Assembly (NCBI GenBank): GCA_000388065.2
Contig: KB932201.1
Direction: 5' to 3' (one strand)
From: Fonticula alba ATCC 38817
Taxonomy: Eukaryota > Protista > Nucleariida
Length of the DNA: 64,000 nucleotides
Below, in pieces: positions 1 to 58,432 of this stretch; position 1 is the stretch's first letter; every line of letters starts with the position of its first letter. Under the pieces are notes generated by a model. It searched no databases. It saw only the letters and a list, made by a program, of their open reading frames with translations, and was not told the DNA's origin. Made by a program: the position numbers and the translations under genes.

Positions 1-3000
1 CGAAGCCATGGTGACCCCACACAACCGTCCGGGCCCTCCCAATCATCACCCGGTCAGTCCCTCGGTTGGGGATCGGCGGCCGCACCGAGGGGTGATGCTT
101 TCATGGAAGATTGTTGTGAGAGCGCGAGCCGGCCCAAACACCTGTACATGGCTGCCCCTTTGCCGTGCGAGGGCGGGGGCGGCGGGGCGCTGNNNNNNNN
201 NNNNNNNNNNNNNNNNNNNNNNNNNNNGGGGGGGGGGGGCAGCACGTCCGGTGAAGGGCTCCCCCCGCTCTGTCGCTGCGCCCGCCTGGAGCCGTCTTCG
301 GGTCCCTCCTTCCTGTGCGGCCGGCGTGCGACCGGACCGGGGTACGATCATCTGGTCGCGCGCCTAAAACACATCAACACAATGTACACATTCCCTCGGG
401 AGTCTCCTCGAGCGTCATCAAATCGGGCAGCCCTGCGGGCCGGGGGAAAAAACAGTCGCTCCAACACGTTCCGCCCCCTGCCGCCACCGCCGGCGCCGGC
501 GCCAGTGCCGCCGCCGGTGGTTCCCCCCTGGACCCCTTCCCCCAAAGAGCCCCCGGCCGAAATCAATAAGCTCGGCCTCTTCTCCCCGTACACATACTTC
601 TGAGACCCTTCCGTATGGCGGTCTCTCCGCCCGCTGGAGTATCCTCCTCGCACAGCAAGGTCGCCCCGTGCTCCCCCGCCCCCGCTCGCTCACCCACCCG
701 CCCCGTTGGATCAAACAAAGGCGGTCCCCGGCCGGCGCCCCTTCCTGCGGAAAAGCACACACGTCCAGCGCCGTGGCGCAGCAGCCAGCACCCCCGCTCG
801 CCCCCTGTATTTACGAGGCGTTGATGCATTCCACACGCCATCAAGCCGGTGTCTTGTCCGGGTGAGGGCCCCGGTAGCTCGCTTCTTCCCTCAGATCTCC
901 GGAATCAGGCTGGCTGCCCTTCCTCTCGCGCTCTGGCCAGCCGCGCTCCACCCTGCCCACCCTTCCCTACAGAGAGGTCGAGGACCACTCCCCCGCGGCC
1001 GCCCCCCCCCCTCGAGTGCAGAGCGGTGTTTCGTCCCCCACCCCGGCCGGCGCCCCCCTCTCGCGCAGACTCGGTTCTTGATCCAACCACCGACGCCGGG
1101 GCCAGCGGGAGGAAAGGGGTAAATACCGATGGGGCGGTGGTCACGGGATGGGTCATGTGCCTTCCGGCTCGAGGCATGACGTGTCGATCACGGACCCCTG
1201 AGACAAGGCCCTTTTCGCCAAGCCCCGTCCATCAACCCCGGCCCTCACAGGTAACCCCGGGGGAGGGGGGGGGATATACATGCGCGCTTTCCCAGAGTCC
1301 CGCCTGTGCCAGCCATCGACGACGCGTGTGCTCAGGACCGGGGAAAAAATAATAGTGCACCGCGAACTCCCTGGAGCCGTCTGCGCCCTGCTGTGGTGTG
1401 GCAAAAATTGGGCCGCGCACTCGTCAGGCTTCGGAAAAAATGACCGGTCCGCCGTCGCCGGGCCCCTGCCGGTGGTCCTTGCTCGTCCGTCCCCCAACTC
1501 AGGATCGGCCTGCGCGTTTTCTTCTTCTTTTTTTTTCAGCGCCCGGCCACCAGGCCCGTGCCGGGACCATCCTCTGGGGGGGGGGATGCGGTGGGCCACT
1601 GTGATGGTGCGAACGGCGAGGGGGGTGGGGTGGCCCGAGGTGTGGGCAGATCCATCGAGTGTGCACGCCCTCCGTCGGGCTGCCTGCTCGCCCACCCGGG
1701 TCCCCGAGTCTTTTGCCAAGGTAACACCGCCGCGCTTGATAAGACCGCATTCTTTCGCCGGAGCCCGACCTCTGGCGGAATGTCTCGACCGCCACAAACT
1801 CCAGGCGGAGGGCCGGGGGGGAGGGGCACACGACAAAAAACGCCTCTTGCTTACAAAGAGCTGGGCACTCAGGGGGGCGCGGCTGGCAGTCGGGTGTGTG
1901 CGTGTGTGTGTGTGTGCACGCCCGTCTCACCGACGAACGTCAGGTCACCCTTCCAGAGGGGGGAGGTAGAGGGGCATGGGGCGGCACGCCGCCGAAAGGA
2001 CCGGAGGCCGGCATTTCAACCGCGGATGTACGCCTTTCTGCCGTCCCCTCCGGGACACACGCCCCAGGTCTCCGCCCATGTGCTAACGCCTGGCTACTGC
2101 GGCTAATGGCCTCGCCCTTCGTCCGCCCGCCCTTCGCCCGCCCGCCCGCACCCCCCCCTCCGGGCGTGTCTTCCTGTGAAAGCGCGCGAACAGGTCTCCC
2201 TGCCAGCGTACAGGCTCCCCAGGCACGACAGAACAGGACCCAGGGGCAGGCGGGGGGGGGTGGGGGCACACAAAAGAAGATGCAGGCGTTCCCCGCCGCC
2301 CGGTGCGAGGACACGCACCAAGATGGAATACCAGATAGTGGGCGCATCACGGAGACGCGGGCAACAGAGGAGACCCAGGGGTGACTTGCCGGGGAGCAGG
2401 GGGGGGGGGGGCAGACCGCCATCCCTCCGTAAACACACATACACACATGCCTTGTTTCCGTCCCTCGGGAGAGGCCGGCATCTCTGCTCCCTCGAGGAGG
2501 AGAGAGCTTGCCAGATGGCAAACGTGTACCCACACCCAGCGCGCGGTGGTTGCGGCACCGCAACGGCGTCGGTCAGACCTGGGGCATGCCTGGGGGGGGG
2601 GGGCGGGGGCTGGCCGAGCACTGCCGCCCGAAGGGCGACGAGGGGCGGGGCAAGAGGACGAGGGGGTCAGTTGCCCCCTGTGTCTGAACTACCATCCGCA
2701 CACCGGCCCACCATGTCTGTCAACTAGGATGTCCCCCCGCTTTCGCCCCCTTCTGCCTGCCCCCCCCCCCCTTGCCCATCCGAGAAAGATGGGGGGAGGC
2801 CTTTTTTCGGACCCCAATGTGCGACTCCGAGGGCCGGCCCTTGCCCGTCACCTCGCCTCACCCCCCCCCCNNNNNNNNNNNNNNNNNNNNNNNNNNNNNN
2901 NNNNNNNNNNNNNNNNNNNNNNNNNNNNNNNNNNNNNNNNNNNNNNNNNNNNNNNNNNNNNNNNNNNNNNNNNNNNNNNNNNNNNNNNNNNNNNNNNNNN

Positions 3001-3861
3001 NNNNNNNNNNNNNNNNNNNNNNNNNNNNNNNNNNNNNNNNNNNNNNNNNNNNNNNNNNNNNNNNNNNNNNNNNNNNNNNNNNNNNNNNNNNNNNNNNNNN
3101 NNNNNNNNNNNNNNNNNNNNNNNNNNNNNNNNNNNNNNNNNNNNNNNNNNNNNNNNNNNNNNNNNNNNNNNNNNNNNNNNNNNNNNNNNNNNNNNNNNNN
3201 NNNNNNNNNNNNNNNNNNNNNNNNNNNNNNNNNNNNNNNNNNNNNNNNNNNNNNNNNNNNNNNNNNNNNNNNNNNNNNNNNNNNNNNNNNNNNNNNNNNN
3301 NNNNNNNNNNNNNNNNNNNNNNNNNNNNNNNNNNNNNNNNNNNNNNNNNNNNNNNNNNNNNNNNNNNNNNNNNNNNNNNNNNNNNNNNNNNNNNNNNNNN
3401 NNNNNNNNNNNNNNNNNNNNNNNNNNNNNNNNNNNNNNNNNNNNNNNNNNNNNNNNNNNNNNNNNNNNNNNNNNNNNNNNNNNNNNNNNNNNNNNNNNNN
3501 NNNNNNNNNNNNNNNNNNNNNNNNNNNNNNNNNNNNNNNNNNNNNNNNNNNNNNNNNNNNNNNNNNNNNNNNNNNNNNNNNNNNNNNNNNNNNNNNNNNN
3601 NNNNNNNNNNNNNNNNNNNNNNNNNNNNNNNNNNNNNNNNNNNNNNNNNNNNNNNNNNNNNNNNNNNNNNNNNNNNNNNNNNNNNNNNNNNNNNNNNNNN
3701 NNNNNNNNNNNNNNNNNNNNNNNNNNNNNNNNNNNNNNNNNNNNNNNNNNNNNNNNNNNNNNNNNNNNNNNGGGGGGGGGGGGGGGGGGGGGGGACAGGG
3801 GAGGTCGCACCATGCGCATGCGCAACACAACTGTCGGCTGACATCTCGCCGCCACCTCCAG

Positions 3862-4608
3862 CCCCGGAGATCCTTCGCCAGTGTGGCTACGGCAAGAGCG
3901 TGGACAACTGGTCGATCGGTGTGATTGCCTATATCCTGCTCTGTGGCTACCCCCCTTTCTATGATGAGGACCAGGCGACCCTGTTCCAGACTATCATGGC
4001 CGGTGTTTTCGACTTCCACGTGGAGTACTGGTCGCACATCAGCGACTCGGCCAAGGATCTCATCCGCCGGCTGCTGACCGTGGATCCGGCCCAGCGCCTC
4101 ACCGCCGAGGAGGCCCTTCGCCACCCGTGGATCGCGCAGGAGGGCGGCTCCGCCAGCAACATCGACATCCATGAGTCCTTCACCACTCAGCTGGCCAAGT
4201 TCAACGCGCGGCGCAAGCTCCGGTGCGTCTTCCTTTCATATCTTGGCCGCTCCCGAGCGACATATGTGCTCCCCTCCTCCCTCCCCCGGAGGAGCACACA
4301 CGCTGACCATCTCCCTCCATGCGTGTCGGCTGTCTTCTGCCTCCTCGCCATCCTCTGCCTCTCCCCTGCCCCTCCCCCGATGCACGTGCAAACGTGTGCC
4401 CTCCCGTCCAATTTTTAACACACACACACACACACACACACACGCACGCACACGCACACGCCTACGCAGTGCGGCCATGAAGACAGTCGCCATGGTCACT
4501 CGCTTGAAGCGCCTGGGTCTGAACGCCGCCGAGGCCACCGCCGACGAGCAGGAGGAGACCTCGGACTCCTCGCCCCTTGGCTCGCCGACCACCGAGTTCG
4601 CGCAGTAA
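3862..4608 (+). CDS. Ca2+/calmodulin-dependent protein kinase, CaMKI-like (3' part; N-lobe presumably in gap 2871-3771)
   Basis: Exon 3862-4222 encodes (A)PEILRQCGYGKSVDNWSIGVIAYILLCGYPPFYDE...SAKDLIRRLL...RLTAEEALRHPWI (kinase subdomains VIII-XI). GTGCGT..CAG intron 4223-4469. Exon 4470-4608 completes the calmodulin-binding helix ARRKLR|AAMKTVAMVTRL and ends at TAA. Confidence 0.9.
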
Positions 4609-48091: not shown

Positions 48092-50866
48092 TCCCCCCGC
48101 GTCCCCCCGCGTCTCCCCNNNNNNNNNNCCCCCTTCGGCCCCCCGTCCCCCCGCGTCCCCCCGCGTCTCCCCAGCGACCGGGTTGTGCCGGTTGCGCGGT
48201 CGCCCCAGGCGGCATGGGCACCTCTTGGTCGCACGACCGGCCAGCCCTCGTCTCACTCATCGTTGATGATTGCCAGCCCTGCTCGCGCCGGTCCCCACCC
48301 CGGGGCCCGGCACTCGGCCTCGCGCCGCCCACCTGCGGCCCGGCAGGCGCCGAAGGTGGCGTCTTTCGCGGGCTGGGTGTCGTTGCCTGGCCATTCTGCC
48401 ACGCCACACATGTTCCCCCCCTTTCATCCGGCCTGAGGCTTCCCGGGCGTGGTGCTCCGGGGCACGGAAAACTCAGTGCATGCCACAGGCGACATGTGCC
48501 GCCCGGGCGATCGCTCTCACATGGTCCCCCGGTTCGCCAGCGGCGGCCTCCAATCGGCACGGCGATCGATGCTGGCCGCCCGGCAGCCGGGGCGCATGAC
48601 GTCCCCGGCTGGCCACTTCTCCATGGCCGTCCTTCCCCGCCCCCGGAGGCCGGACTCGTTAAGGCCTGCCCCCATTGGGCGCTTTTCTCCCCCCCCCCCC
48701 CCGTCGACTGGCTGGTCGCCGTCTCGACCCGGGTGGCCTGTTTCTCCCCTCCCCGCGCCCCCATTCCCCGGCACACGTTCCGACATCTTCATGCTTAATA
48801 TCACCACCGTGGGCACACGGCGCTGGCGTCTCTCCGGAACCCCGTCCTGCCGGGGGGGGGACGGGGGGAAGTGCGATTGCCCGGCCTTTTCTCGGCGGCC
48901 AGCCTGGGGGGCGGTTCCCGGGAATGAGATGTGTCAAGAAAGTATGGACTGCCCCTGTGTCCCCCCCCGCCCCCCGCCCCACGCCCGGCGCCCGGCGCCC
49001 GGCGCCCAGCACCCCGACTCTGTGGCTCCCTCTGCTTCCGGGCCAGCATTGTCCGGGCATGTGGGTCTGAGTATGTGTGTGCATGTGTGTATGCGTGTGA
49101 CATCGTGGGCAATATGCAGCCTGAGCCCCATCCCCCAGGCGGCCGGGCGGGCGATGCGCCTGCCGAGCGCCCACACGCCGCCGCCCCACGCACGTACGCG
49201 CGCGCGCGCGCGCGCCCGCCCGCCCGAGACCGCCCGCAGGAGCCCCCGAAAGCAGGGGCCCCGGCCCCGGGGAGGCGAGCCGCGCACTTTCTCACAGTCC
49301 TGCCCCCCTCCTGGCCCTCGGAAGAGAAAAGTGCAGGGGGAGGGGGGGGGGCACGGGGGCACGGGGGCGCGAGGCGCGAGGCTGTAATTACTGTGGCACC
49401 GACCAGGCATGGCAGGGCAGGGCCTCGACGGGCAAACAAACTCGTGCCGCGCCACTTCGCATGCGGCAGTCCGTCCCTCCTGGCCTCGCGCGATCCGGTG
49501 AATGCGCGCGCGCACACGCGTACACATGCGCGCTCGCGAACTGGCCCATGTGTGGCCGACGCATTGGCTCGACGGGGTGGATCGCGCCGGCTCTCGTGCT
49601 CCGGCGGTGACGGCCGCCCGGACGGCCCGGCGCCCGGTCCTGAAGCCGGACGCTCCTGCGGGAGGGGGCCCGGCCACATCGGACGCCCCGGCCCAGCGTG
49701 TTTGTTCAGGAGGAGGAGGAGGAGGAGGAGACGCCGGACGCGCGGAGGGCCGCACACGCACGCCCCCAGAAGGCCCGTACAAGGTGTCAGATTGGCAGGC
49801 GCTGGTCGGGGCCGATGTGAAACAGCCTCACCTCCTTCCAATGTTTACCGGTGCCCAGGGCCCCCTCCCTCCCGGGCAGGTGACCGGCTCCACCGATGTG
49901 TGTGCGCGCGTGTGCGTGCGTCCAACGACCGGTGGGGGGGGGGGGGGGGNNNNNNNNNNNNNNNNNNNNNNNNNNNNNNNNNNNNNNNNNNNNNNNNNNN
50001 NNNNNNNNNNNNNNNNNNNNNNNNNNNNNNNNNNNNNNNNNNNNNNNNNNNNNNNNNNNNNNNNNNNNNNNNNNNNNNNNNNNNNNNNNNNNNNNNNNNN
50101 NNNNNNNNNNNNNNNNNNNNNNNNNNNNNNNNNNNNNNNNNNNNNNNNNNNNNNNNNNNNNNNNNNNNNNNNNNNNNNNNNNNNNNNNNNNNNNNNNNNN
50201 NNNNNNNNNNNNNNNNNNNNNNNNNNNNNNNNNNNNNNNNNNNNNNNNNNNNNNNNNNNNNNNNNNNNNNNNNNNNNNNNNNNNNNNNNNNNNNNNNNNN
50301 NNNNNNNNNNNNNNNNNNNNNNNNNNNNNNNNNNNNNNNNNNNNNNNNNNNNNNNNNNNNNNNNNNNNNNNNNNNNNNNNNNNNNNNNNNNNNNNNNNNN
50401 NNNNNNNNNNNNNNNNNNNNNNNNNNNNNNNNNNNNNNNNNNNNNNNNNNNNNNNNNNNNNNNNNNNNNNNNNNNNNNNNNNNNNNNNNNNNNNNNNNNN
50501 NNNNNNNNNNNNNNNNNNNNNNNNNNNNNNNNNNNNNNNNNNNNNNNNNNNNNNNNNNNNNNNNNNNNNNNNNNNNNNNNNNNNNNNNNNNNNNNNNNNN
50601 NNNNNNNNNNNNNNNNNNNNNNNNNNNNNNNNNNNNNNNNNNNNNNNNNNNNNNNNNNNNNNNNNNNNNNNNNNNNNNNNNNNNNNNNNNNNNNNNNNNN
50701 NNNNNNNNNNNNNNNNNNNNNNNNNNNNNNNNNNNNNNNNNNNNNNNNNNNNNNNNNNNNNNNNNNNNNNNNNNNNNNNNNNNNNNNNNNNNNNNNNNNN
50801 NNNNNNNNNNNNNNNNNNNNNNNNNNNNNNNNNNNNNNNNNNNNNNNNNNNNNNNNNNNNNNNNNC

Positions 50867-52656
50867 CTCCCCCTGACCCCTTCGACCTTCGCTCCTGTCA
50901 GCTTCCCCCGGGCTTTAGCTTGGAGAGCATCCCCCCTCTCACCATCAAGGCCTTCCTGCATGAGTCTTTCGTCACGGTGTCCGTCCGTCCGGATTCCACC
51001 ATCGAGCGTCTGTCGGACATCATTGCCGAGGCCTTCATCAAGCACTTTCCGTACGGATCCCGAATCACCCGCTCACTTCCCATCCCCTCCCCGGCCGCAC
51101 TGCTTGTGTGCCAGCCCACTTTTCTTTTCACTCACTCACACACACACACTCACACTCACACACGCGCATACACTCGCCTTCCTCCGCGATCCCCTTACTC
51201 TTGACCTTTTTTCTGACGGACAAAATAGGAACATCCCCTCCTTCTCCTGCTCGGCTCTGCTGGATGAGGCCCTCGTCCCGTTGCAGTTTGCCGATCTGGC
51301 TGGTCATGTCCTGTCCAACGGGTCCATCCTCCGAGTGGTCCCGATCCCGCTGACCTCGCTCGATGCCACCAGCCCCGGAGCCCTGGGCGTCGCTCGGGTG
51401 TCCACCGCGGCCATGATGGCCCCCTGCAAGGATGCCCCACCGACCACGGCAGTCGTGTCGTCGTCGTCGTCGTCGGCGTCGTCGATGACGACCACGATGG
51501 CGGCCAGCGCCAGCGCCAGCACCAGCGCCGCCGCCACCGGGCTCTCCATCGACAAGGATGTTCCCCCTTCTGGCGAGGAGTCCCCCACCTCGGAAACCGA
51601 TGACACCACCACCTCCACCGCCTCCTCGACCGTGACCACCTCTTCCATGACCACCGAGTCCTCGGACCAGCCACCGGCCAACTTCAATCCCGCCGCCCGG
51701 CGAGGCTCGCAGCTGCTCTTCCAACTGGGCTCCAATGCCGCCATGTCCACCAACCTCAAGGACTATGACCTGGTCGAGAATGGCCCCCTCCCGCCGGCGG
51801 CCGCGGCCGCCCCGGCTACCGTTCTCTCGGCCGGCTCCTCCCTTGGCAGTCTGCTGGAGGAGGACTCGCCTTCCATCCTGGCCATTGAGCTGGAGACCCA
51901 CGTCGAGCAGGGCCCCCCCTCGACCGGCGCCGCTCCGGTGGCTCCCTCGGTCGTGCCTGCCGCCGGCGCCGCGGCCGCGACTCCTTCCTCGGCCGCCACG
52001 CCGGCCAGCCCCAATCATGCGGTCCTGGCCAACCTCTTCTTCGATGATCAGGAGCTCTACAATGCCCTGCGCAACCGGGCCTTCTTGCGCTCGTTCGCCG
52101 AGTTCTGCGAGTTCCAGTACTGCCTGGAGCCGGTGCTCTTCTGGATGGACACCGAGGCCTTCCAGTTCCTGGCACGCGCGCAGGATGCCCGCGATCTGCA
52201 AGTCGGCCGCCTGGTCAAGATGGCCGCCTGGATTCAGGCCCATTACATCGACCCCGAGGGGCCGCTCCGCTTGAATATCCATTCGAATGCCCTGTACGTG
52301 CTCTTCCGGTTCTCGCCTGTGCTCCCTTCTCTCCCGGGAGCGGGACCCCCATGGCCTCGCACCCGCCCATGCGGTGGGTCGCACTTGTCCCAGCTACCCC
52401 ATGGCCCTAACCATGCATCCTTGGCTCTCCTCGCCTCCCTTGCGCGCCTTGTCCATCACAGGGCCACCATTTCGGCTCCCTTCACCACCTCCTCGCCTCC
52501 CCGGGCCGATGGCTTCCACAATGCCCAAGCCCGCATGTTCTCGGTCATCCGTGATGTGCTCCTCCCGCAGTACATTCGAAGCCGGTTCTACCGGGATCTC
52601 GAGCGACGCATTCGTCGGGGTGCGTCCCTGTTGCTCTGCATGCCTCTGCCGGTTCC

Positions 52657-52699
<43 letters not shown>

Positions 52700-55600
52700 C
52701 CCCCCCCACGGTCACCGGTTCTGCCTTGCCACATGCCTCCCACTGACACTGCTCCCTCCCTCTTGCTGCTCTCCCTGGCAAAGATCCCACTTCCTATCAG
52801 CAGGCCTACGTGGAGAACATCGGCGAGCACTTTGCCAGCCTCCTGCGTGCCGAGGACTCGTGGTCGGTCTCTTGGAAGAAAATCCCCGCTCCCAAGCCGG
52901 CCCCCGATGCCCGGGCCAGCGCCGCCAACAGCCTCCCCCCCGTGGCACCAGTGTACAACGAGTCGCCGGAGCAAATCCTCTCGATTGTCCTCCGCCGGTA
53001 CTGGCCCGAGGCTCCCTTCCCTCGGTTGTACTTCCTGGAGCGCCAGCGCGTCCTGGTGCAGAAGCGCCAGCAGCAGATCCAGCTGATCCGTCGGCTGCGG
53101 AAGTTCTTCGGGGACCAGCCGATGCTCGATTCGATTGTCAACATCTCGCCCATGCGTTACTCGGCTGGACCGAATGCCGGCGGCATGCTCGATGCGGCCG
53201 GGCGCTCTTCCTCGGCCCTCTTGTCGCCCTCCAGTTCGGGCCGCGTGGCGGCCACGCACTTTGCCAGTTCCTCGGCTCTGCCGCTGCTCGGGTCCGGGTC
53301 CAGCCTGTCGTTGGATGACGGGTCCCAGGTGACGGCCTCCTCCTCCAGCGCTTCCATCGCCATGGCCGGCACCGGTGTCGGTGCTGCGCCGGCCGCCACC
53401 GCTGCTGCCGCTGCATCTGGCACGGCCTCCGGCTCCGGGGGGGAGGCCACCTCCGGGGCCGCCGGTCCCAACCTCAATTCGACCCTTCGCCTGGCGGAGG
53501 GCGGCAAGAGTGTCACCAATGGCTCGGCCCGTTCGGTCAGCCTTAGCATGGGCGTCCGGCCGACGCCCTCCGGGGGCGGCAGCGGCAGCGGGGCCCCAGG
53601 CTCGGGACTCAACCTCGGCTGGGGCATCACCAGCTCCCTGTCGGTGGACAGCTTCGATGACCTGCTGAATGGCATTGCCAACACGCCGATCATGGGCCAG
53701 CGCGCCGGGCCGGGGGCCCTGCGGCCGGCTTCCGGCTTTGGTCCCTACGATTTGCAGATGTCCTACAGCCACTCGAGCCACGAGCTGAATGCCCATCCGT
53801 CGCTGGCCGGCGGTGCTGGCGGTGCTGGCGGTGGTGCTGGCAGCGCTTCCGGCGACCGATTCATCAAGATGCGCCGGGCGGAGAAACTCCAGGACTTCTT
53901 CGGCGACAAGCTCCCCTCGCATGCGCTGGCCGACCAGAAGATCCACCGGCCGGAAAACTTTGCCGCGGTGGATCTTTCCCGCGAGGACCAGGACTCCACG
54001 GATCCGCTGGGCACATCGCACCACCAACAGTCCAAGGCCGGGGCCTCGTCCACGCGCTACCTCGGCCAGTTTGGCCTCTTTGCCGAGGAGGGCGGTGCTG
54101 CGGGCGGCTCCGGCTCCGGCGGCGGCTCCGGCGGCCGGGGGCAAAATGTCCTCGGACCACGCGACATCTTGGCCCCGGCACCCACGTCGAACATCCTCAC
54201 CTCCGAGGAGCGGCGCATCCTCATGAAGCGCTCGCGCAAGTTGAACCGCGTTCTTGGCAATCCCATTGGCGAGGAGTTCCTCCTGGAAACGGCCACCGCT
54301 GCGGCTCTCGCTGCTCAGCAGCAGCCAGCCTCCACGGTCACCGCCGCCGGCGCCGGAAGCACCGATGGCCATCATCCCTCTCACCATCGCGGCCCATCGC
54401 CCCTCGGGAGCCTTGGCCGTGCCGCCTCCACCGAATCATGCCCCGGCTCGCCGCCGCCCCTGGCCATGTTCGTTCTCTTTCCCCATGCCGTCTGCCTCCC
54501 TTGCCGGGGCCTCCGCGCTTTTTTCCCTCCTCTTCCTCTTCCTCTTCCTCCTCTTGTCTCCACAGCCCTTGGTTGGTGCCCTTCCTGACCCCTCCCCTTG
54601 TTGCTGGTCTCACGATTGCTCCCCTTCTTGCGGCGTCCTGCTCTCGGTCATGTGCTTTTGTCCTACAATGGCAGGAACGTTCGTCGCAACACCGACCCCC
54701 TGGGCCGGACGCTGACACACGAGTCGATTGCCATTTCGGCGTCTGGGATGATCCCGGCCGGGGTGGATGGCAGCAACCCGGCCACCTACTTCGGCTCGAC
54801 CACCTCCTTGTCGATGCACCACTCGGCTTCGGCTGGAACCCTGCGCGGGGGGAATTCGCCTGGACCAGACATCCTTGGCCATGCGCAAGTTGGTTTGTGT
54901 GATTCCCCGGCTGGGGGCTCCTCCTCGATGGGTGGCACCCCGGTGGCCATGGGCCTTCCGCCGGTCACCGGCACGGGCCAGCACACCGGCTCGCCCACTT
55001 CCCTCGCCTCGGGACTGGCGGCCCCGGCCGGTGGCCAGCTGTTGTCGTCGTCTTCCTCACAGCAACTTGGCTACCTTGCTCCACCAGGCACCATGACCCG
55101 GGCCCCCTCGTCGATCATTGTCGGATCCGGCGTGACCACCATCGGCGGGCTGGCGACGCTCCCCTCGCCGGAGCCCCTGGCCTCGGACTTCCTGTCTTCC
55201 CGGCGGAGCACCTTCTTCAGCACCACGCAGGGGCTCGGCTCCGGCATCGGTGGCACTGCCGGGGGGTCTGCCTCGGCCGGTGGGGCTGGCATTGATGACA
55301 TCGATGCCGGGGCCCTGCTCATGGCCACCGTGTCCTCGGACGAGGAGGATGATGATCCGTACCAGCGCAAGGAGTACCGCCTGCGCAAGCTGTCCAAGCT
55401 CCAGGAGTTCCTCGGGGAGCGCCTCAACCGACAGCTACTGGAGTCCCAGCAGATCATCCCTCGGCCGCACATGTCGCCGGAGGAGCGCCGCGCCCAGCAG
55501 AAGCGCCTGCGTAAGTTGGCCAGCGTCTTTGGGCATCATCCCCCCGCTCCGGGGGAAGGACCGACCGATGACTTCCCCGCCGATCAGATGGCCTTCCTGC

Positions 55601-56949
55601 AGGACTCCTCCTCCAGCGGGGATCTGTCAAGTTCGCTGCTCATCCACCCGTCCGATCCGCTGGAAGTGCGCAATTCCAAGTCCATCCGGGCACTGGCCTT
55701 CCTGGTGGACAATCAGGATGACAGTGAGCTGGATGACTTCTTCAAGCGCATTGCCGATCTCGAGCTGGAGGATTCATCGTCAGCCGCGGCTGCCGTCGCC
55801 ACTGCGGATGTCTCCTCGCCGGTGGATCCGGCTCGTGCGCGCCAGGCGCGTCAGAAGAAGTTGAAGAAGCTTCAGCGTTTCTTCGGTGAGACCTTCAGTG
55901 AAGAGGTGATGGTATGTATTTTCCCCCGGTCTCCTTCTTTCTCTCTCTCTCTCCCCCCCCCTCTCTCTCTCTCCCCACCGGTGCCACACGTTTTTGCCCA
56001 CTTCCCTCCCGTCGTCCTCCCTCTCAGGGGGAAGGGAGGGCGGCGGTTCTGCGTGGCTGCTGGTTTCTCTTTTCCCTCCCTTTCCAAAGTTTTCTCTTCT
56101 TCCTCCATCTTCCTTTGTTGGGTTTCCTCCTTCCCCTCCTTCCCCTCCTCCCCCCATCTGCCTCTTTCCTCTTTTCCGCATGACCTTCGTATCACCTTTC
56201 GTCGTCTTCCTGTCGTCCCGCGAGATTGTAGTCACTTGGCCTGTGGACGTGTGAGTATGTATGTATGTGCGTGCGTGCGTGTGTGCGTGTGTGCGTGTGT
56301 GCGTGTGTGCGTGTGCGTGTGTCTGCGTCTGTGTCTGCAGGCACATATGCATGTTGAAATGATCGCAAGCGTCAAGTGGGCGTTTGCTTTCCTGTGTGCC
56401 AATGTGCGGCCACATTGCGTTATTTATGTGTAAGTGTGGGCGGGCGCATTGTGTGTCTGAGCGCAAGCATCCGTGGCATCATATGCAGAGCCTGCTCGGC
56501 GAGACATCGTGTTGAATTCTGGCCATGTGCGAACGATGTCTTCTGCTGCAGCCCCTGGCTCCTGCTATGTGCCTGGGTGCCAGAATGCGATGTACCTATC
56601 CCCGCTGGCCTCGCAGAGAGAAAAAAAGAGGAAGACAGAGAGAGAGAGAAAGTGAGAGATAGTTGGAGAGAGAGAGAGGGCGCGAGCACACGCACGCGAT
56701 CTTTCCTCCTCCATATGGGGAGTATGCTGAGAGTGCCCGGTTGTGCGTGCCCGCCTGTTTAGTTGTCGGCCTCTGGCTGATGGCCAGGTCCCTTTCGGAC
56801 TTTTGCTGTGCTGTGCCGACTGCTCGGGCAAATGATCCTGCGGTTGACTTGCTTCCCTCTCCTCTTCCCTCTCCTCTCCTCTCTCTCTCTCTCTCTTTCC
56901 GTCTTTCCTCATATCCCCCTCCTGTTGTCCGGCGAAGAGTGACGCCTGT

Positions 56950-57007
<58 letters not shown>

Positions 57008-58432
57008 GCCAGTTGTGATATGCATTTCTCACAAGACCCACTGCGCCTCTGCCTGCTTCTCTCCTGGCCAGGTTGTTGCCGCTGCCCAGCCATCATCGAG
57101 TCACACCGTCACTCTGTCGCTACACCATGCCAGCCCATCAGCCGGGAGGGTGCCGATCCCCCTTGTCATCTCTTCCTCGACATGCGGTTTCGACGGTCTC
57201 CCTCCCGGGATCACCTCTCCCGAGGTGGAGACATCTCCCTGAGATGACGCGCCCTCCAAAGGGGCGTCGCCTCTCCTCCACCCCCGCCAACCTTGTGCGG
57301 AAGGACATGGGAGAACGTCTGTGGGCGTGTGGTTCTCTCACCCTTCGCTTGAAAGGGGGGAATTGGCTGATTGGGGCCGCGACCGTGATGGCGACTGGGC
57401 AGCAACACGACTGCGCATCCTCTCCCCCTCCTTATCCCTCCTTCTCCCTCCTTCTCCCTCCCCCCTCCTTCCCCCCTCCCTCCCCCCTCCCTCCCCTTCC
57501 TCCACTCAAGCGGTAGATTGACATTCTCCGGGTTCTTCCCGCTTTCTCCGAAGAACAAGTACAATCTCTTCGAAAACATTACTCAGACCATCGCCCGGAC
57601 GATGGAGACCGCCAGCGGCGCCGATGCCCAGGCCATTCTCGAGGACATGGAGGATCTCAAGGTCCGGGTGATCCGACGCCTCAGCATCGCCTCGTCGCAG
57701 CACAATTCCTCCAACGAGACCACATCCTTGGCGGGCTCCTACAAGTCGTCGGCCCTGTCGGCCGCCGCCTTGACCGACACGTCCCTGGAGACGTGTGCTC
57801 TTCTTTCAGACCCCGATTATCGGACTCTCGCATCGGAGGATAACCACCGGCGGACATCCAGTCAGGCCCCCCCCTCGCCGCATCCCTTCCCCCCAGCTCG
57901 CCGGCGCCCACTCCCCCTGGCGGATGATGCCAGCAGCGTGGCCTGCAAGTGCGGCACTCTCTATCGCGATGGCAGCACCTCGGATGGCGGGGCCGCCCGG
58001 TGTGTGGCCTGCGGCCCTGCTTCGGGTCCGGGGGCGGTCGTCACCGGCACCGGAGCCGGCAGCGACCGCGGGCCGGTGTCCCACAACGGCGGCGGCGGCG
58101 GCGGCACCACCAGTGTCACCTCCGGCGATGAGGGGGACCTGGATGCGGCCGGCGCCTCGGGCGTGGCCACCGTGGCCCGCCACCCCTCGACCGGCTGCTC
58201 GGCATCCTCCCTGTCGCACTTGGACGCCGCGTCGGCCCTCTCGCCCGATCGCCGCCCGCGTGTGCACTCCCCCGCCGGCGCCGGCTCCACGATGGCCAGC
58301 TTGACGTCCGATATCCCCAGCGACATGGCCGACTCCTTCGATGGCGGCATTTCCTCCTCCTCGCTCGGTGACCTCGATGGTGATGCGGATTTCGAGGATG
58401 CCACCTCTGATTCGACGGACAGTGATGTTTGA
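50867..58432 (+). CDS. Uncharacterised >1,700-aa RGS-domain protein with N-terminal beta-grasp-like domain and repeated KLxxFFG-type motifs (5' end in gap 49950-50866)
   Basis: Exons <50867-51050, 51229-52293, 52462-52619, 52784-54467, 54675-55911 and probably ~57554-58432, all phase-consistent. RGS box: FLRSFAEFCEFQYCLEPVLFWMDTEAF..AAWIQAHYIDPEGPLRLNIHS..FHNAQARMFSVIRDVLLPQYIRSRFY. Linkage of the last exon across a 1.6-kb intron is less certain. Confidence 0.8.
56955..57005 (+). repeat. (CA)~25 microsatellite in the long intron of the RGS gene
   Basis: Read directly. Confidence 0.9.

What the first reader, a model, noticed from the sequence alone, without database searches (positions are those of the whole stretch)
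53086..55911. Six spaced (K/R)L..(F/V)(F/L)G helices in two alternating types: candidate undescribed signalling scaffold
Seen, embedded in about 900 aa of disordered S/G/A linker: (1) IRRLRKFFGDQP 53086, (2) KMRRAEKLQDFFGDKLP 53866, (3) LTSEERRILMKRSRKLNRVLGNP 54196, (4) YRLRKLSKLQEFLGERL 55375, (5) MSPEERRAQQKRLRKLASVFGHH 55471, (6) RQKKLKKLQRFFGETF 55849. Copies 2+3 and 4+5 form matching pairs: an FFG/FLG type followed by an [ST].EERR...KR.RKL..V(L/F)G type. The copies are conserved as protein but not as DNA, which implies selection. I know of no named domain for this motif. Inference: multivalent docking helices, functionally analogous to GoLoco motifs, so one protein could combine a Ras-like input, a G-alpha-binding RH domain and a repeated effector-binding array.
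Basis: partly seen in the sequence, partly recalled or inferred. Interest (0 to 1): 0.78.

Follow-up and report, generated by a model that had tools for sequence, protein, structure and literature searches.

The report
Conserved six-helix tail of a fungal-lineage RGS protein
The six spaced helix motifs are real and are the hallmark of an unnamed protein family, found from the amoeba Fonticula to chytrid, zoopagalean and mushroom-forming fungi, that joins a G-protein "off-switch" domain to six short basic helices whose binding partner is unknown.

Summary
Observation confirmed. All six motifs are at the stated coordinates, in one frame.

They lie in one annotated protein, Fonticula alba H696_00451 (1742 aa, "RGS domain-containing protein"). 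The exons join in phase.

A profile of the six copies found 216 proteins at E<=0.001 among 1.84 billion, most with 5-6 matched stretches. These are true relatives with one layout:
- ubiquitin-like N-domain and canonical RGS domain;
- six helices in fixed order, each with its own signature, core K-L-x-x-hydrophobic-[F/L]-G;
- an acidic C-terminal helical region.

The two alternating types hold family-wide. Named members are nucleariid, chytrid, sanchytrid, Olpidium and Zoopagomycota. Basidiomycota keep motifs 3-6 without the RGS domain.

Pfam, PDB and the literature searches name nothing for the tail.

Function is untested. My best reading is a multivalent array of capped docking helices. GoLoco, GBA and SIRK-type G-protein peptides were tested as memberships and not met. 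The "Ras-like input" is not supported: the N-domain is a ubiquitin-like beta-grasp closest to the Par3 N-terminal domain.

Verdict: a real, conserved, apparently undescribed module.

The parts
50902..51352 (+). N-terminal ubiquitin-like (beta-grasp) domain, aa ~20-110 of P0001. It is split by an intron at 51051-51229. The annotated first exon (49841-49897) lies across an assembly gap, so the true N-terminus is uncertain.
   Evidence: Exon map. Sub-threshold Pfam PF10407 at aa 47-106. In relative P0093 the matching residues 24-130 have pLDDT above 90 and match Par3-NTD at Z 12.8.
52028..52619 (+). RGS domain (aa ~336-478), split by intron 52294-52462.
   Evidence: Pfam PF00615: 46.1 bits, cut-off 23.9, E 7.7e-12. 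PDB phmmer hits RGS2 and RGS5. Exon map.
52784..53049 (+). Post-RGS helical extension leading into motif 1.
   Evidence: Aligned to family profile positions 93-460 together with the RGS domain. The equivalent region of P0093 (300-404) is helical with pLDDT 85-95.
53050..53112 (+). Motif 1 helix (type A), ends R-R-L-R-K-F-F-G; Gly codon at 53110.
   Evidence: Family signature KEKKL.KFFG.RP.
53842..53904 (+). Motif 2 helix (type A), ends E-K-L-Q-D-F-F-G followed by ..LP; Gly codon at 53902.
   Evidence: Family signature K.KK.EKL..FFG..LP..Q.
54196..54258 (+). Motif 3 helix (type B), with an N-cap box T-S-E-E-R-R and ending R-K-L-N-R-V-L-G; Gly codon at 54256.
   Evidence: Family signature N.L..EERR.L.KR.KKL...LGE.
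54468..54674 (+). Intron (GTTCGT...GGCAG, 207 nt) between the exons carrying motifs 1-3 and motifs 4-6. The junction is in phase (AT|G = Met).
   Evidence: The junction peptide is present in P0001.
55354..55416 (+). Motif 4 helix (type A), ends S-K-L-Q-E-F-L-G-E-R-L; Gly codon at 55414.
   Evidence: Family signature KL.KL..FLGERI. Single-sequence AF2 gives a helix with pLDDT 73-79.
55471..55533 (+). Motif 5 helix (type B), with an N-cap box S-P-E-E-R-R and ending R-K-L-A-S-V-F-G followed by ..PP; Gly codon at 55531.
   Evidence: Family signature RPLT..EK....KR..KLER.FG..PP. The AF2 helix ends one residue before the Gly, pLDDT ~78.
55681..55773 (+). Weakly conserved helical segment between motifs 5 and 6.
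   Evidence: Two helices in the single-sequence AF2 model, residues 127-154. Similar segments are seen by eye in relatives.
55825..55887 (+). Motif 6 helix (type A), ends K-K-L-Q-R-F-F-G; Gly codon at 55885.
   Evidence: Family signature K..R...L.KL.KFFG.
57554..57680 (+). Start of the last exon: conserved acidic C-terminal helical region that follows motif 6. It is reached across a 1642-nt intron (55912-57553).
   Evidence: Exon map. Family profile segment 640-878 aligns to aa 1257-1513. In P0093 helices 711-762 have pLDDT 82-93. The 60 aa after motif 6 carry a median net charge of -5.

Best explanation
The six motifs are the defining feature of an unnamed, ancient protein family of the fungal lineage (nucleariids plus fungi). 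The family layout is: ubiquitin-like N-domain, canonical RGS domain with a helical extension, six short basic alpha-helices in fixed order, and an acidic C-terminal helical region. Each motif is a pre-formed helix of about 18-24 residues. It ends exactly at an invariant Gly cap; types 3 and 5 also start with an S/T/D-x-E-E capping box. On its last two turns it shows a compact knob of Lys(-6), Leu(-5) and two hydrophobics (-2, -1). Disordered linkers of very variable length separate the helices. Most likely (inferred, not shown) the helices are multivalent protein-docking sites. They would hold one or several partners near the RGS GTPase-activating domain, and an A-type plus B-type pair would be the working unit. 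The partner is unknown. Heterotrimeric G-protein subunits are the leading candidates by context only. The module can work without the RGS domain, since Basidiomycota keep motifs 3-6 and the C-terminal region alone.
For: Shown:
- The motifs are non-random.
- A profile of the six copies finds 216 proteins at E<=0.001 and 68 at E<=1e-10, mostly with 5-6 stretches.
- 73 of 151 retrieved proteins have exactly six copies, downstream of an RGS domain.
- Each position has its own conserved signature, and Fonticula keeps these (G.RP, G..LP..Q, LGE, FLGER, G..PP).
- A family profile built without Fonticula matches P0001 at E 1.1e-99 over all parts.
- Over 790 copies: K at -6 in 96%, L/I at -5 in 98%, F/L at -1 in 96%, G at 0 in 99%. 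This is far stricter than composition alone needs.
- In the AF2 model of relative P0093 every helix stops within two residues of the Gly. Helix pLDDT is 70-89 and linker pLDDT is under 50. The Fonticula piece gives helices at motifs 4-6.
- Spacing varies 33-317 aa while order is fixed.
- Basidiomycota match only profile positions ~545-855.
- One metagenomic relative (P0005) repeats the m4-m5 pair, reaching 12 copies.
- The Fonticula genome has at least four G-alpha loci.
Inferred: docking function, partner identity, scaffold role.
Against: - No partner was tested, and co-folding was not available.
- The motif fails the published GBA pattern (1 of 158 proteins).
- There is no GoLoco hit.
- The SIRK peptide scores only -4.2 bits against a family median of 25.6.
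- Motifs 1 and 6 adjoin confidently folded helices, so at least these two may be structural.
- Helix pLDDT up to 86 could mean that the helices pack against the core. The tool returns no contacts, so I could not check this.
- The helices are strongly basic (+3 to +6), which also fits lipid or calmodulin binding.
Confidence: 0.5

Rival explanations
1. Intramolecular assembly. The six helices, the post-RGS extension and the acidic C-terminal helices fold back on one another or on the RGS domain. They would form a discontinuous helical domain or an autoinhibitory lid, so they would not be free docking sites.
For: In the AF2 model of P0093, motif 1 is continuous with a high-confidence helical extension and motif 6 with high-confidence C-terminal helices. 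Isolated motif helices reach pLDDT 85-86, and pTM is 0.58 although 180 residues have pLDDT under 50. Basic helices (+3 to +6) face an acidic C-terminal region (-5). Conserved hydrophobics at +3 and +8 after the Gly suggest that each unit is a small helix-turn-helix.
Against: Linkers vary from 33 to 317 aa and are predicted disordered. Basidiomycota keep only motifs 3-6 without the RGS domain. Pair units can be multiplied to 12 copies. No solved fold matches the tail.
Confidence: 0.22
2. Electrostatic membrane anchors. The basic helices bind acidic phospholipids and together hold the RGS protein at the plasma membrane next to G-alpha, as the N-terminal helices of small RGS proteins do (general knowledge).
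For: Net charge is +3 to +6 per 18-mer, against -1 for linker controls. 46% of the tail's K/R residues are concentrated in the helices. The context is an RGS protein that must meet membrane-bound G-alpha.
Against: Mean hydrophobicity is about 0.1 and the hydrophobic moment only 0.19-0.36, low for lipid-binding helices. Near-invariance of K(-6), L(-5) and G(0), and position-specific signatures kept from nucleariids to fungi, are more than lipid binding usually demands.
Confidence: 0.15
3. Calmodulin (or another EF-hand protein) binding sites. Six basic amphipathic helices with bulky anchors would make the RGS protein calcium-regulated.
For: The helices are basic, 18-24 residues long, and carry L and F anchors. 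Only the general character of calmodulin targets supports this (knowledge, not tested).
Against: The hydrophobic residues cluster at the C-terminal two turns rather than spanning 10-14 residues. No IQ or other calmodulin-binding family was hit in Pfam. This idea was not tested directly.
Confidence: 0.08
4. Chance pattern in low-complexity sequence, or an artefact of a wrong gene model.
For: The tail is S/G/A-rich. The annotated N-terminus spans an assembly gap.
Against: 6 observed against 0.008 expected. More than 200 relatives carry the same ordered array. Exon junctions are in phase and the layout is collinear in other species.
Confidence: 0.01

Closest known systems
RGS12 / RGS14 (RGS domain + ubiquitin-fold Ras-binding domains + GoLoco helix motif)
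   Same: One protein joins a canonical RGS domain, a beta-grasp domain and short helical peptide motif(s) in a disordered C-terminal region.
   Different: The order differs: here the beta-grasp comes before the RGS domain. The beta-grasp is closest to Par3-NTD and ubiquitin, not RA/RBD. There are six motifs instead of one. There is no GoLoco match, and GoLoco is reported only in metazoans and choanoflagellates (PMC3971589). G-alpha binding was not tested.
GBA (G-alpha-binding-and-activating) motif of GIV/Girdin, DAPLE, NUCB1/2; consensus psi-T-psi-x-[D/E]-F-psi (PMC4760084)
   Same: Both are short helices with the hydrophobic spacing L-x-x-F-psi. GBA motifs sit in regulators of heterotrimeric G proteins and dock in a groove on G-alpha (PMC10943482).
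   Different: The family has Lys (96%) where GBA has Thr or Ser. It has no conserved acidic residue before the Phe. A Gly follows invariably. The published search pattern hits 1 of 158 family proteins.
SIRK/SIGK G-beta-gamma-binding peptides (SIRKALNILGYPDYD, PMC3608556)
   Same: In register, SIRK shares R(-7), K(-6), I-L-G at -2 to 0, and P at +2.
   Different: SIRK has Ala instead of Leu at -5. Its score against the family matrix is -4.2 bits (family median 25.6), and 4.6% of shuffles do as well. This is a weak lead only.
Arrays of L-x-x-L-L type helices in disordered regions (e.g. nuclear-receptor coactivators), general knowledge
   Same: Both have several short amphipathic helices with a psi-x-x-psi-psi core, flanked by basic residues, spaced by disordered linkers, each with its own flanks. 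The resemblance is in how they may work: multivalent docking into a groove.
   Different: The proteins and cellular setting are unrelated. Here Lys(-6) and a Gly cap are invariant, and the number and order of helices are fixed.
Par3 N-terminal domain / Net1-Dnt1 N-terminus (PF10407)
   Same: The N-terminal beta-grasp of the family model matches Par3-NTD at Z 12.8 (83 of 84 residues, rmsd 2.0). Two members give sub-threshold PF10407 hits.
   Different: Sequence identity is 18% and the Pfam scores are below the cut-off. Self-association was not tested.

Membership tests
RGS domain (Pfam PF00615) | Profile match above the curated cut-off | tested here: met
   46.1 bits against a cut-off of 23.9, E 7.7e-12, aa 349-469 of P0001. 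Relatives score 51-77 bits.
RGS domain (Pfam PF00615) | RGS helical fold | tested here: met
   Tested on the model of relative P0093: RGS3 and RGS4 at Z 13.3, rmsd 1.6-2.1, 115-122 residues aligned. Foldseek probability 1.00 to RGS1 and RGS16. The Fonticula domain itself was not folded.
RGS domain (Pfam PF00615) | G-alpha-contacting Asn residues. Their role in RGS4 is from general knowledge. | tested here: inconclusive
   In the alignment to RGS2, the Asn of ..E-I-N-I-D.. is kept (..R-L-N-I-H..). The Asn of ..E-E-N-I-E-F-W.. is Pro in Fonticula (L-E-P-V-L-F-W), while the family consensus keeps E-N. GAP activity was not tested.
GoLoco motif (PF02188) | Profile match | tested here: not met
   No hit in P0001 at E up to 10, nor in 19 relatives.
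GBA motif | [quoted passage not shown] | tested here: not met
   1 of 158 family proteins has any match, and none of the six Fonticula copies does. Position -6 is Lys in 96% of 790 copies.
SIRK/SIGK-type G-beta-gamma hot-spot peptides | Sequence likeness to the selected peptide | tested here: not met
   -4.2 bits against the family matrix; 913 of 20,000 shuffles score as well. Binding itself cannot be tested here.
Ras-association / Ras-binding ubiquitin-fold domains | Profile match, or best structural match to RA/RBD | tested here: not met
   No RA/RBD Pfam hit. The best structural matches are Par3-NTD, Rad60 SLD2 and ubiquitin. Plexin ubiquitin-like domains appear only lower in the list, at Z 9.6-10.1.
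Unnamed 'six KL-x-x-FFG helix' RGS family (defined here) | Six ordered helices with position-specific signatures after the RGS domain, plus an acidic C-terminal helical region | tested here: met
   A family profile built without Fonticula matches P0001 at E 1.1e-99 in three collinear segments. Fonticula keeps the position-specific signatures.
Any family with a solved structure (tail only) | Sequence-profile or fold match to the tail | tested here: not met
   The motif profile and the family profile hit only RGS domains or nothing. Fold searches matched only the RGS and beta-grasp parts. The tail was not folded and searched on its own.

The most novel reading that the evidence does not exclude
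The K-L-x-x-psi-psi-G helices are a new, fungal-lineage class of G-protein-subunit-binding motif. This would be the Holomycota counterpart of GoLoco and GBA motifs, which are known only from animals and their close relatives. The protein would then be a two-function regulator: its RGS domain switches G-alpha off, while its six helices capture G-alpha-GDP or G-beta-gamma. Basidiomycota would keep the capture module as a separate protein.
Probability: 0.2. Interest if true: 0.85.

Novelty: new variant of a known kind. Interest (0 to 1): 0.62.

Why it matters
RGS proteins are the main brakes on heterotrimeric G-protein signalling, and the modules attached to them decide where and on what they act. 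This module is conserved from nucleariid amoebae to mushrooms, yet Pfam has no model for it, every named member I looked up is 'hypothetical', 'uncharacterized' or labelled only as RGS-domain-containing, and my literature searches found no paper on it. It gives a clear sequence handle (a profile and six signatures) for a whole family. It also gives a short list of residues to mutate. If the helices bind G-protein subunits, fungi would have their own non-receptor G-protein regulators. GoLoco motifs are reported only from animals and choanoflagellates (PMC3971589).

Tried and rejected
- Word-index protein searches with the exon-5 ORF, with the RGS-bearing ORF and with aa 1265-1460 of P0001 found only the Fonticula protein itself. 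The second one supplied the full-length record.
- ESM Atlas, twice: no usable hit.
- Motif profile against PDB sequences: only chance-level hits, E above 1.
- Own-genome search with the motif profile found only the six copies. The DNA pattern for K-L-x-x-F-F-G gave 5 hits against 2 for the control, two of them ours. The three others have no basic helix upstream. So this is not a genome-wide motif in Fonticula.
- GBA pattern: rejected.
- SIRK likeness, recalled from memory and then checked against a paper's sequence: rejected as evidence.
- GoLoco, WH2, IQ, villin headpiece and RA/RBD: no Pfam hits.
- Literature searches for the motif, for Fonticula RGS and for chytrid RGS found nothing on this tail.
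- Fold searches with the 774-residue model matched only the RGS and beta-grasp domains.
The full-length sequence used is the database record P0001, which matches the exon translations.
Full report
**What is at the site.**
The window is GC-rich eukaryotic DNA with short GT-AG introns. They lie in frame 1 of the + strand at 53086, 53866, 54196, 55375, 55471 and 55849. Anchored on their Gly, they align without gaps. Leu(-5) and Gly(0) are invariant, basic residues fill -6, -7, -9 and -10, and two hydrophobics sit at -2 and -1. Codon choice differs between copies.

**Is it more than chance?**
No shuffle out of 20,000 reached 6. The bare core L..[FV][FL]G gives 6 against 0.09. Nearly half of the tail's Lys/Arg sit in the 13% of its length just upstream of the six glycines.

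**One gene, one protein.**
A word search with the RGS-bearing ORF returned the annotated protein H696_00451 of Fonticula alba. It is 1742 aa and labelled 'RGS domain-containing protein' (P0001).

Mapped back, its exons are 49841-49897, 50902-51050, 51230-52293, 52463-52619, 52784-54467, 54675-55911 and 57554-58429. Motifs 1-3 lie in the fifth exon and motifs 4-6 in the sixth. The intron between them (54468-54674) joins the exons in phase.

P0001 is the database's own record, and it agrees with the exon translations. The first annotated exon lies across a run of N, so the true N-terminus is uncertain.

Pfam finds only the RGS domain (46.1 bits, aa 349-469) and a sub-threshold match of aa 47-106 to PF10407. 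It finds nothing in the tail.

**Relatives.**
Word-index searches found no relative. I therefore used the single exhaustive search, with a profile of the six 33-residue windows (alignment A3).
- It returned 216 proteins at E<=0.001 and 68 at E<=1e-10 out of 1.84 billion.
- Most have 5-6 matched stretches, and one has 11.

Read directly, the top hits share one layout: an N-terminal domain, an RGS domain, six motifs in the same order, then an acidic helical C-terminus. Of the 151 proteins, 73 have exactly six copies by a simple rule, and 76 have an RGS domain detectable from the Fonticula one. Many of the rest are fragments.

A family profile built from 54 members without Fonticula (A4) matches P0001 at E 1.1e-99. 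The match has three collinear segments covering N-domain + RGS + motif 1, motifs 2-3, and motifs 4-6 + C-terminus. Fonticula is thus a true member; its linkers are simply much longer (spacings 264, 118, 317, 39, 118 aa against medians 65, 70, 90, 46, 102).

**Who has it.**
The 30 hits I could look up are all 'hypothetical', 'uncharacterized', unnamed or labelled only by the RGS domain.
- With the RGS domain: Paraphysoderma, Synchytrium, Olpidium, Rhizophlyctis, Amoeboradix (sanchytrid), Fimicolochytrium, Geranomyces, Gorgonomyces, Coemansia and Piptocephalis.
- Basidiomycota (no RGS match by phmmer from the Fonticula RGS domain): Coniophora, Cytidiella, Somion, Rhodosporidiobolus, Pleurotus, Marasmiellus and Exobasidium.

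The Basidiomycota proteins match only profile positions ~545-855, that is motifs 3-6 and the C-terminus, with no RGS part.

No Ascomycota or Mucoromycota member turned up among those named, but most hits were not looked up.

In Fonticula itself the motif profile finds only these six copies. The K-L-x-x-F-F-G DNA pattern is not enriched elsewhere.

**Anatomy of the motif.**
Each of the six positions has its own conserved signature over 73 six-copy proteins:

| Motif | Family signature |
|---|---|
| 1 | KEKKL.KFFG.RP |
| 2 | K.KK.EKL..FFG..LP..Q |
| 3 | N.L..EERR.L.KR.KKL...LGE |
| 4 | KL.KL..FLGERI |
| 5 | RPLT..EK....KR..KLER.FG..PP |
| 6 | K..R...L.KL.KFFG |

Fonticula keeps these details.

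Over 790 copies, -6 is Lys in 96%, -5 is Leu/Ile in 98%, -1 is Phe/Leu in 96% and 0 is Gly in 99%.

Leaving out the core, flank profiles group motifs 2, 4 and 6 together and motifs 3 and 5 together (20-23 bits against 4-15). One metagenomic relative repeats the m4-m5 pair several times, reaching 12 copies. An A+B pair therefore looks like the unit of duplication.

**Predicted structure.**
The AF2 model of relative P0093 (774 aa, 54-row alignment) has mean pLDDT 75 and pTM 0.58.
- It gives a beta-grasp at 26-126.
- It gives an RGS domain and a helical extension up to motif 1, all at pLDDT 85-98.
- The motif helices are 381-404, 441-458, 511-527, 581-596, 620-637 and 686-703.
- The glycines are at 405, 459, 529, 597, 638 and 705, so each helix stops within two residues of its Gly.
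- Helix pLDDT is 70-89 and linkers are under 50.
- C-terminal helices 711-762 have pLDDT 82-93.

The Fonticula piece 55300-55911 folded alone also puts motifs 4-6 in helices.

The S/T/D-x-E-E start of types 3 and 5 reads as a helix N-capping box. That is an inference from general knowledge.

The helices carry +3 to +6 net charge but are weakly amphipathic (moment 0.19-0.36, mean hydrophobicity ~0.1). Linkers are slightly acidic, and the 60 residues after motif 6 carry about -5.

**Comparison with known things.**
- The RGS domain is canonical. The family profile hits RGS18, RGS4, RGS1 and RGS2 at about 1e-20. Fonticula's own domain is nearest RGS2 and RGS5. The fold matches RGS3 and RGS4 at Z 13.3. 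In the RGS2 alignment one of the two Asn I checked is Pro in Fonticula, while the family keeps Asn.
- The N-domain's best structural match is the Par3 N-terminal domain (Z 12.8), then SUMO-like and ubiquitin domains. That is no support for a Ras-binding reading.
- For the tail there is no Pfam, PDB-sequence or fold match.
- GoLoco: no hit. A survey reports GoLoco only from metazoans and choanoflagellates (PMC3971589).
- GBA motif: the L-x-x-F-psi spacing is shared, but the published pattern hits 1 of 158 family proteins (PMC4760084).
- SIRK peptide (sequence from PMC3608556): -4.2 bits against a family median of 25.6, and 4.6% of shuffles score as well.
- My literature searches found no description of this tail.

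**How it most likely works.**
Shown: a fixed-order array of six capped helices that present a near-invariant Lys-Leu-x-x-hydrophobic-hydrophobic-Gly patch. The array has been kept since before nucleariids and fungi split. It tolerates very different linker lengths and survives without the RGS domain in Basidiomycota.

Inferred: the helices are multivalent docking sites for one or more proteins (confidence about 0.5). G-protein subunits are the leading candidates only because of the RGS context; Fonticula has at least four G-alpha loci and about eight RGS loci.

Rivals: folding back onto the protein's own core or C-terminal helices (0.22), electrostatic membrane anchoring (0.15), and calmodulin binding (0.08). 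The structure tool returns no contacts, so I could not separate the first rival from docking.

**Verdict.**
I rate it a new variant of a known kind: an RGS scaffold with a new, conserved helix-array module. Interest 0.62.

Noticed in passing
window ~49950-50870: A run of N (assembly gap) lies inside the 5' part of the gene. The annotated model jumps from 49841-49897 to 50902 across it, so the first 19 residues and the true N-terminus of H696_00451 are doubtful. Relatives have 25-170 more residues before the beta-grasp.
   Followed up: partly
window 55912-57553: The last intron is 1642 nt, against 164-207 nt for the four internal introns that do not span the assembly gap. It holds a GT/GC-rich microsatellite at about 56270-56340 and long pyrimidine tracts. 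It might hide an unannotated exon or another feature.
   Followed up: no
window 52650-52705: There is a pure C tract of about 45-50 bases inside the intron between the RGS exon and the exon carrying motifs 1-3.
   Followed up: no
window 52100-52115 (RGS exon): In the conserved E-N-x-x-F-W segment of the RGS domain, Fonticula has Pro instead of Asn (L-E-P-V-L-F-W). The family consensus and human RGS2 have Asn. This might weaken or alter G-alpha contact.
   Followed up: partly
protein P0064 (family member, unnamed source): One family member has a dual-specificity phosphatase domain (PF00782, 2e-21) fused in front of the RGS domain and the six motifs.
   Followed up: no
proteins P0005 and P0039 (metagenomic family members): These are RGS-less proteins with 12 and 9 motif copies. 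In P0005 the extra copies come from repeats of the motif 4 + motif 5 pair; P0039 shows an internal duplication. In P0005 the pair behaves as a duplicating unit.
   Followed up: partly
window 2001-4000: GC drops to 0.37 in this 2-kb block, as in the block that holds the N run at 50-52 kb. It is probably another assembly gap.
   Followed up: no
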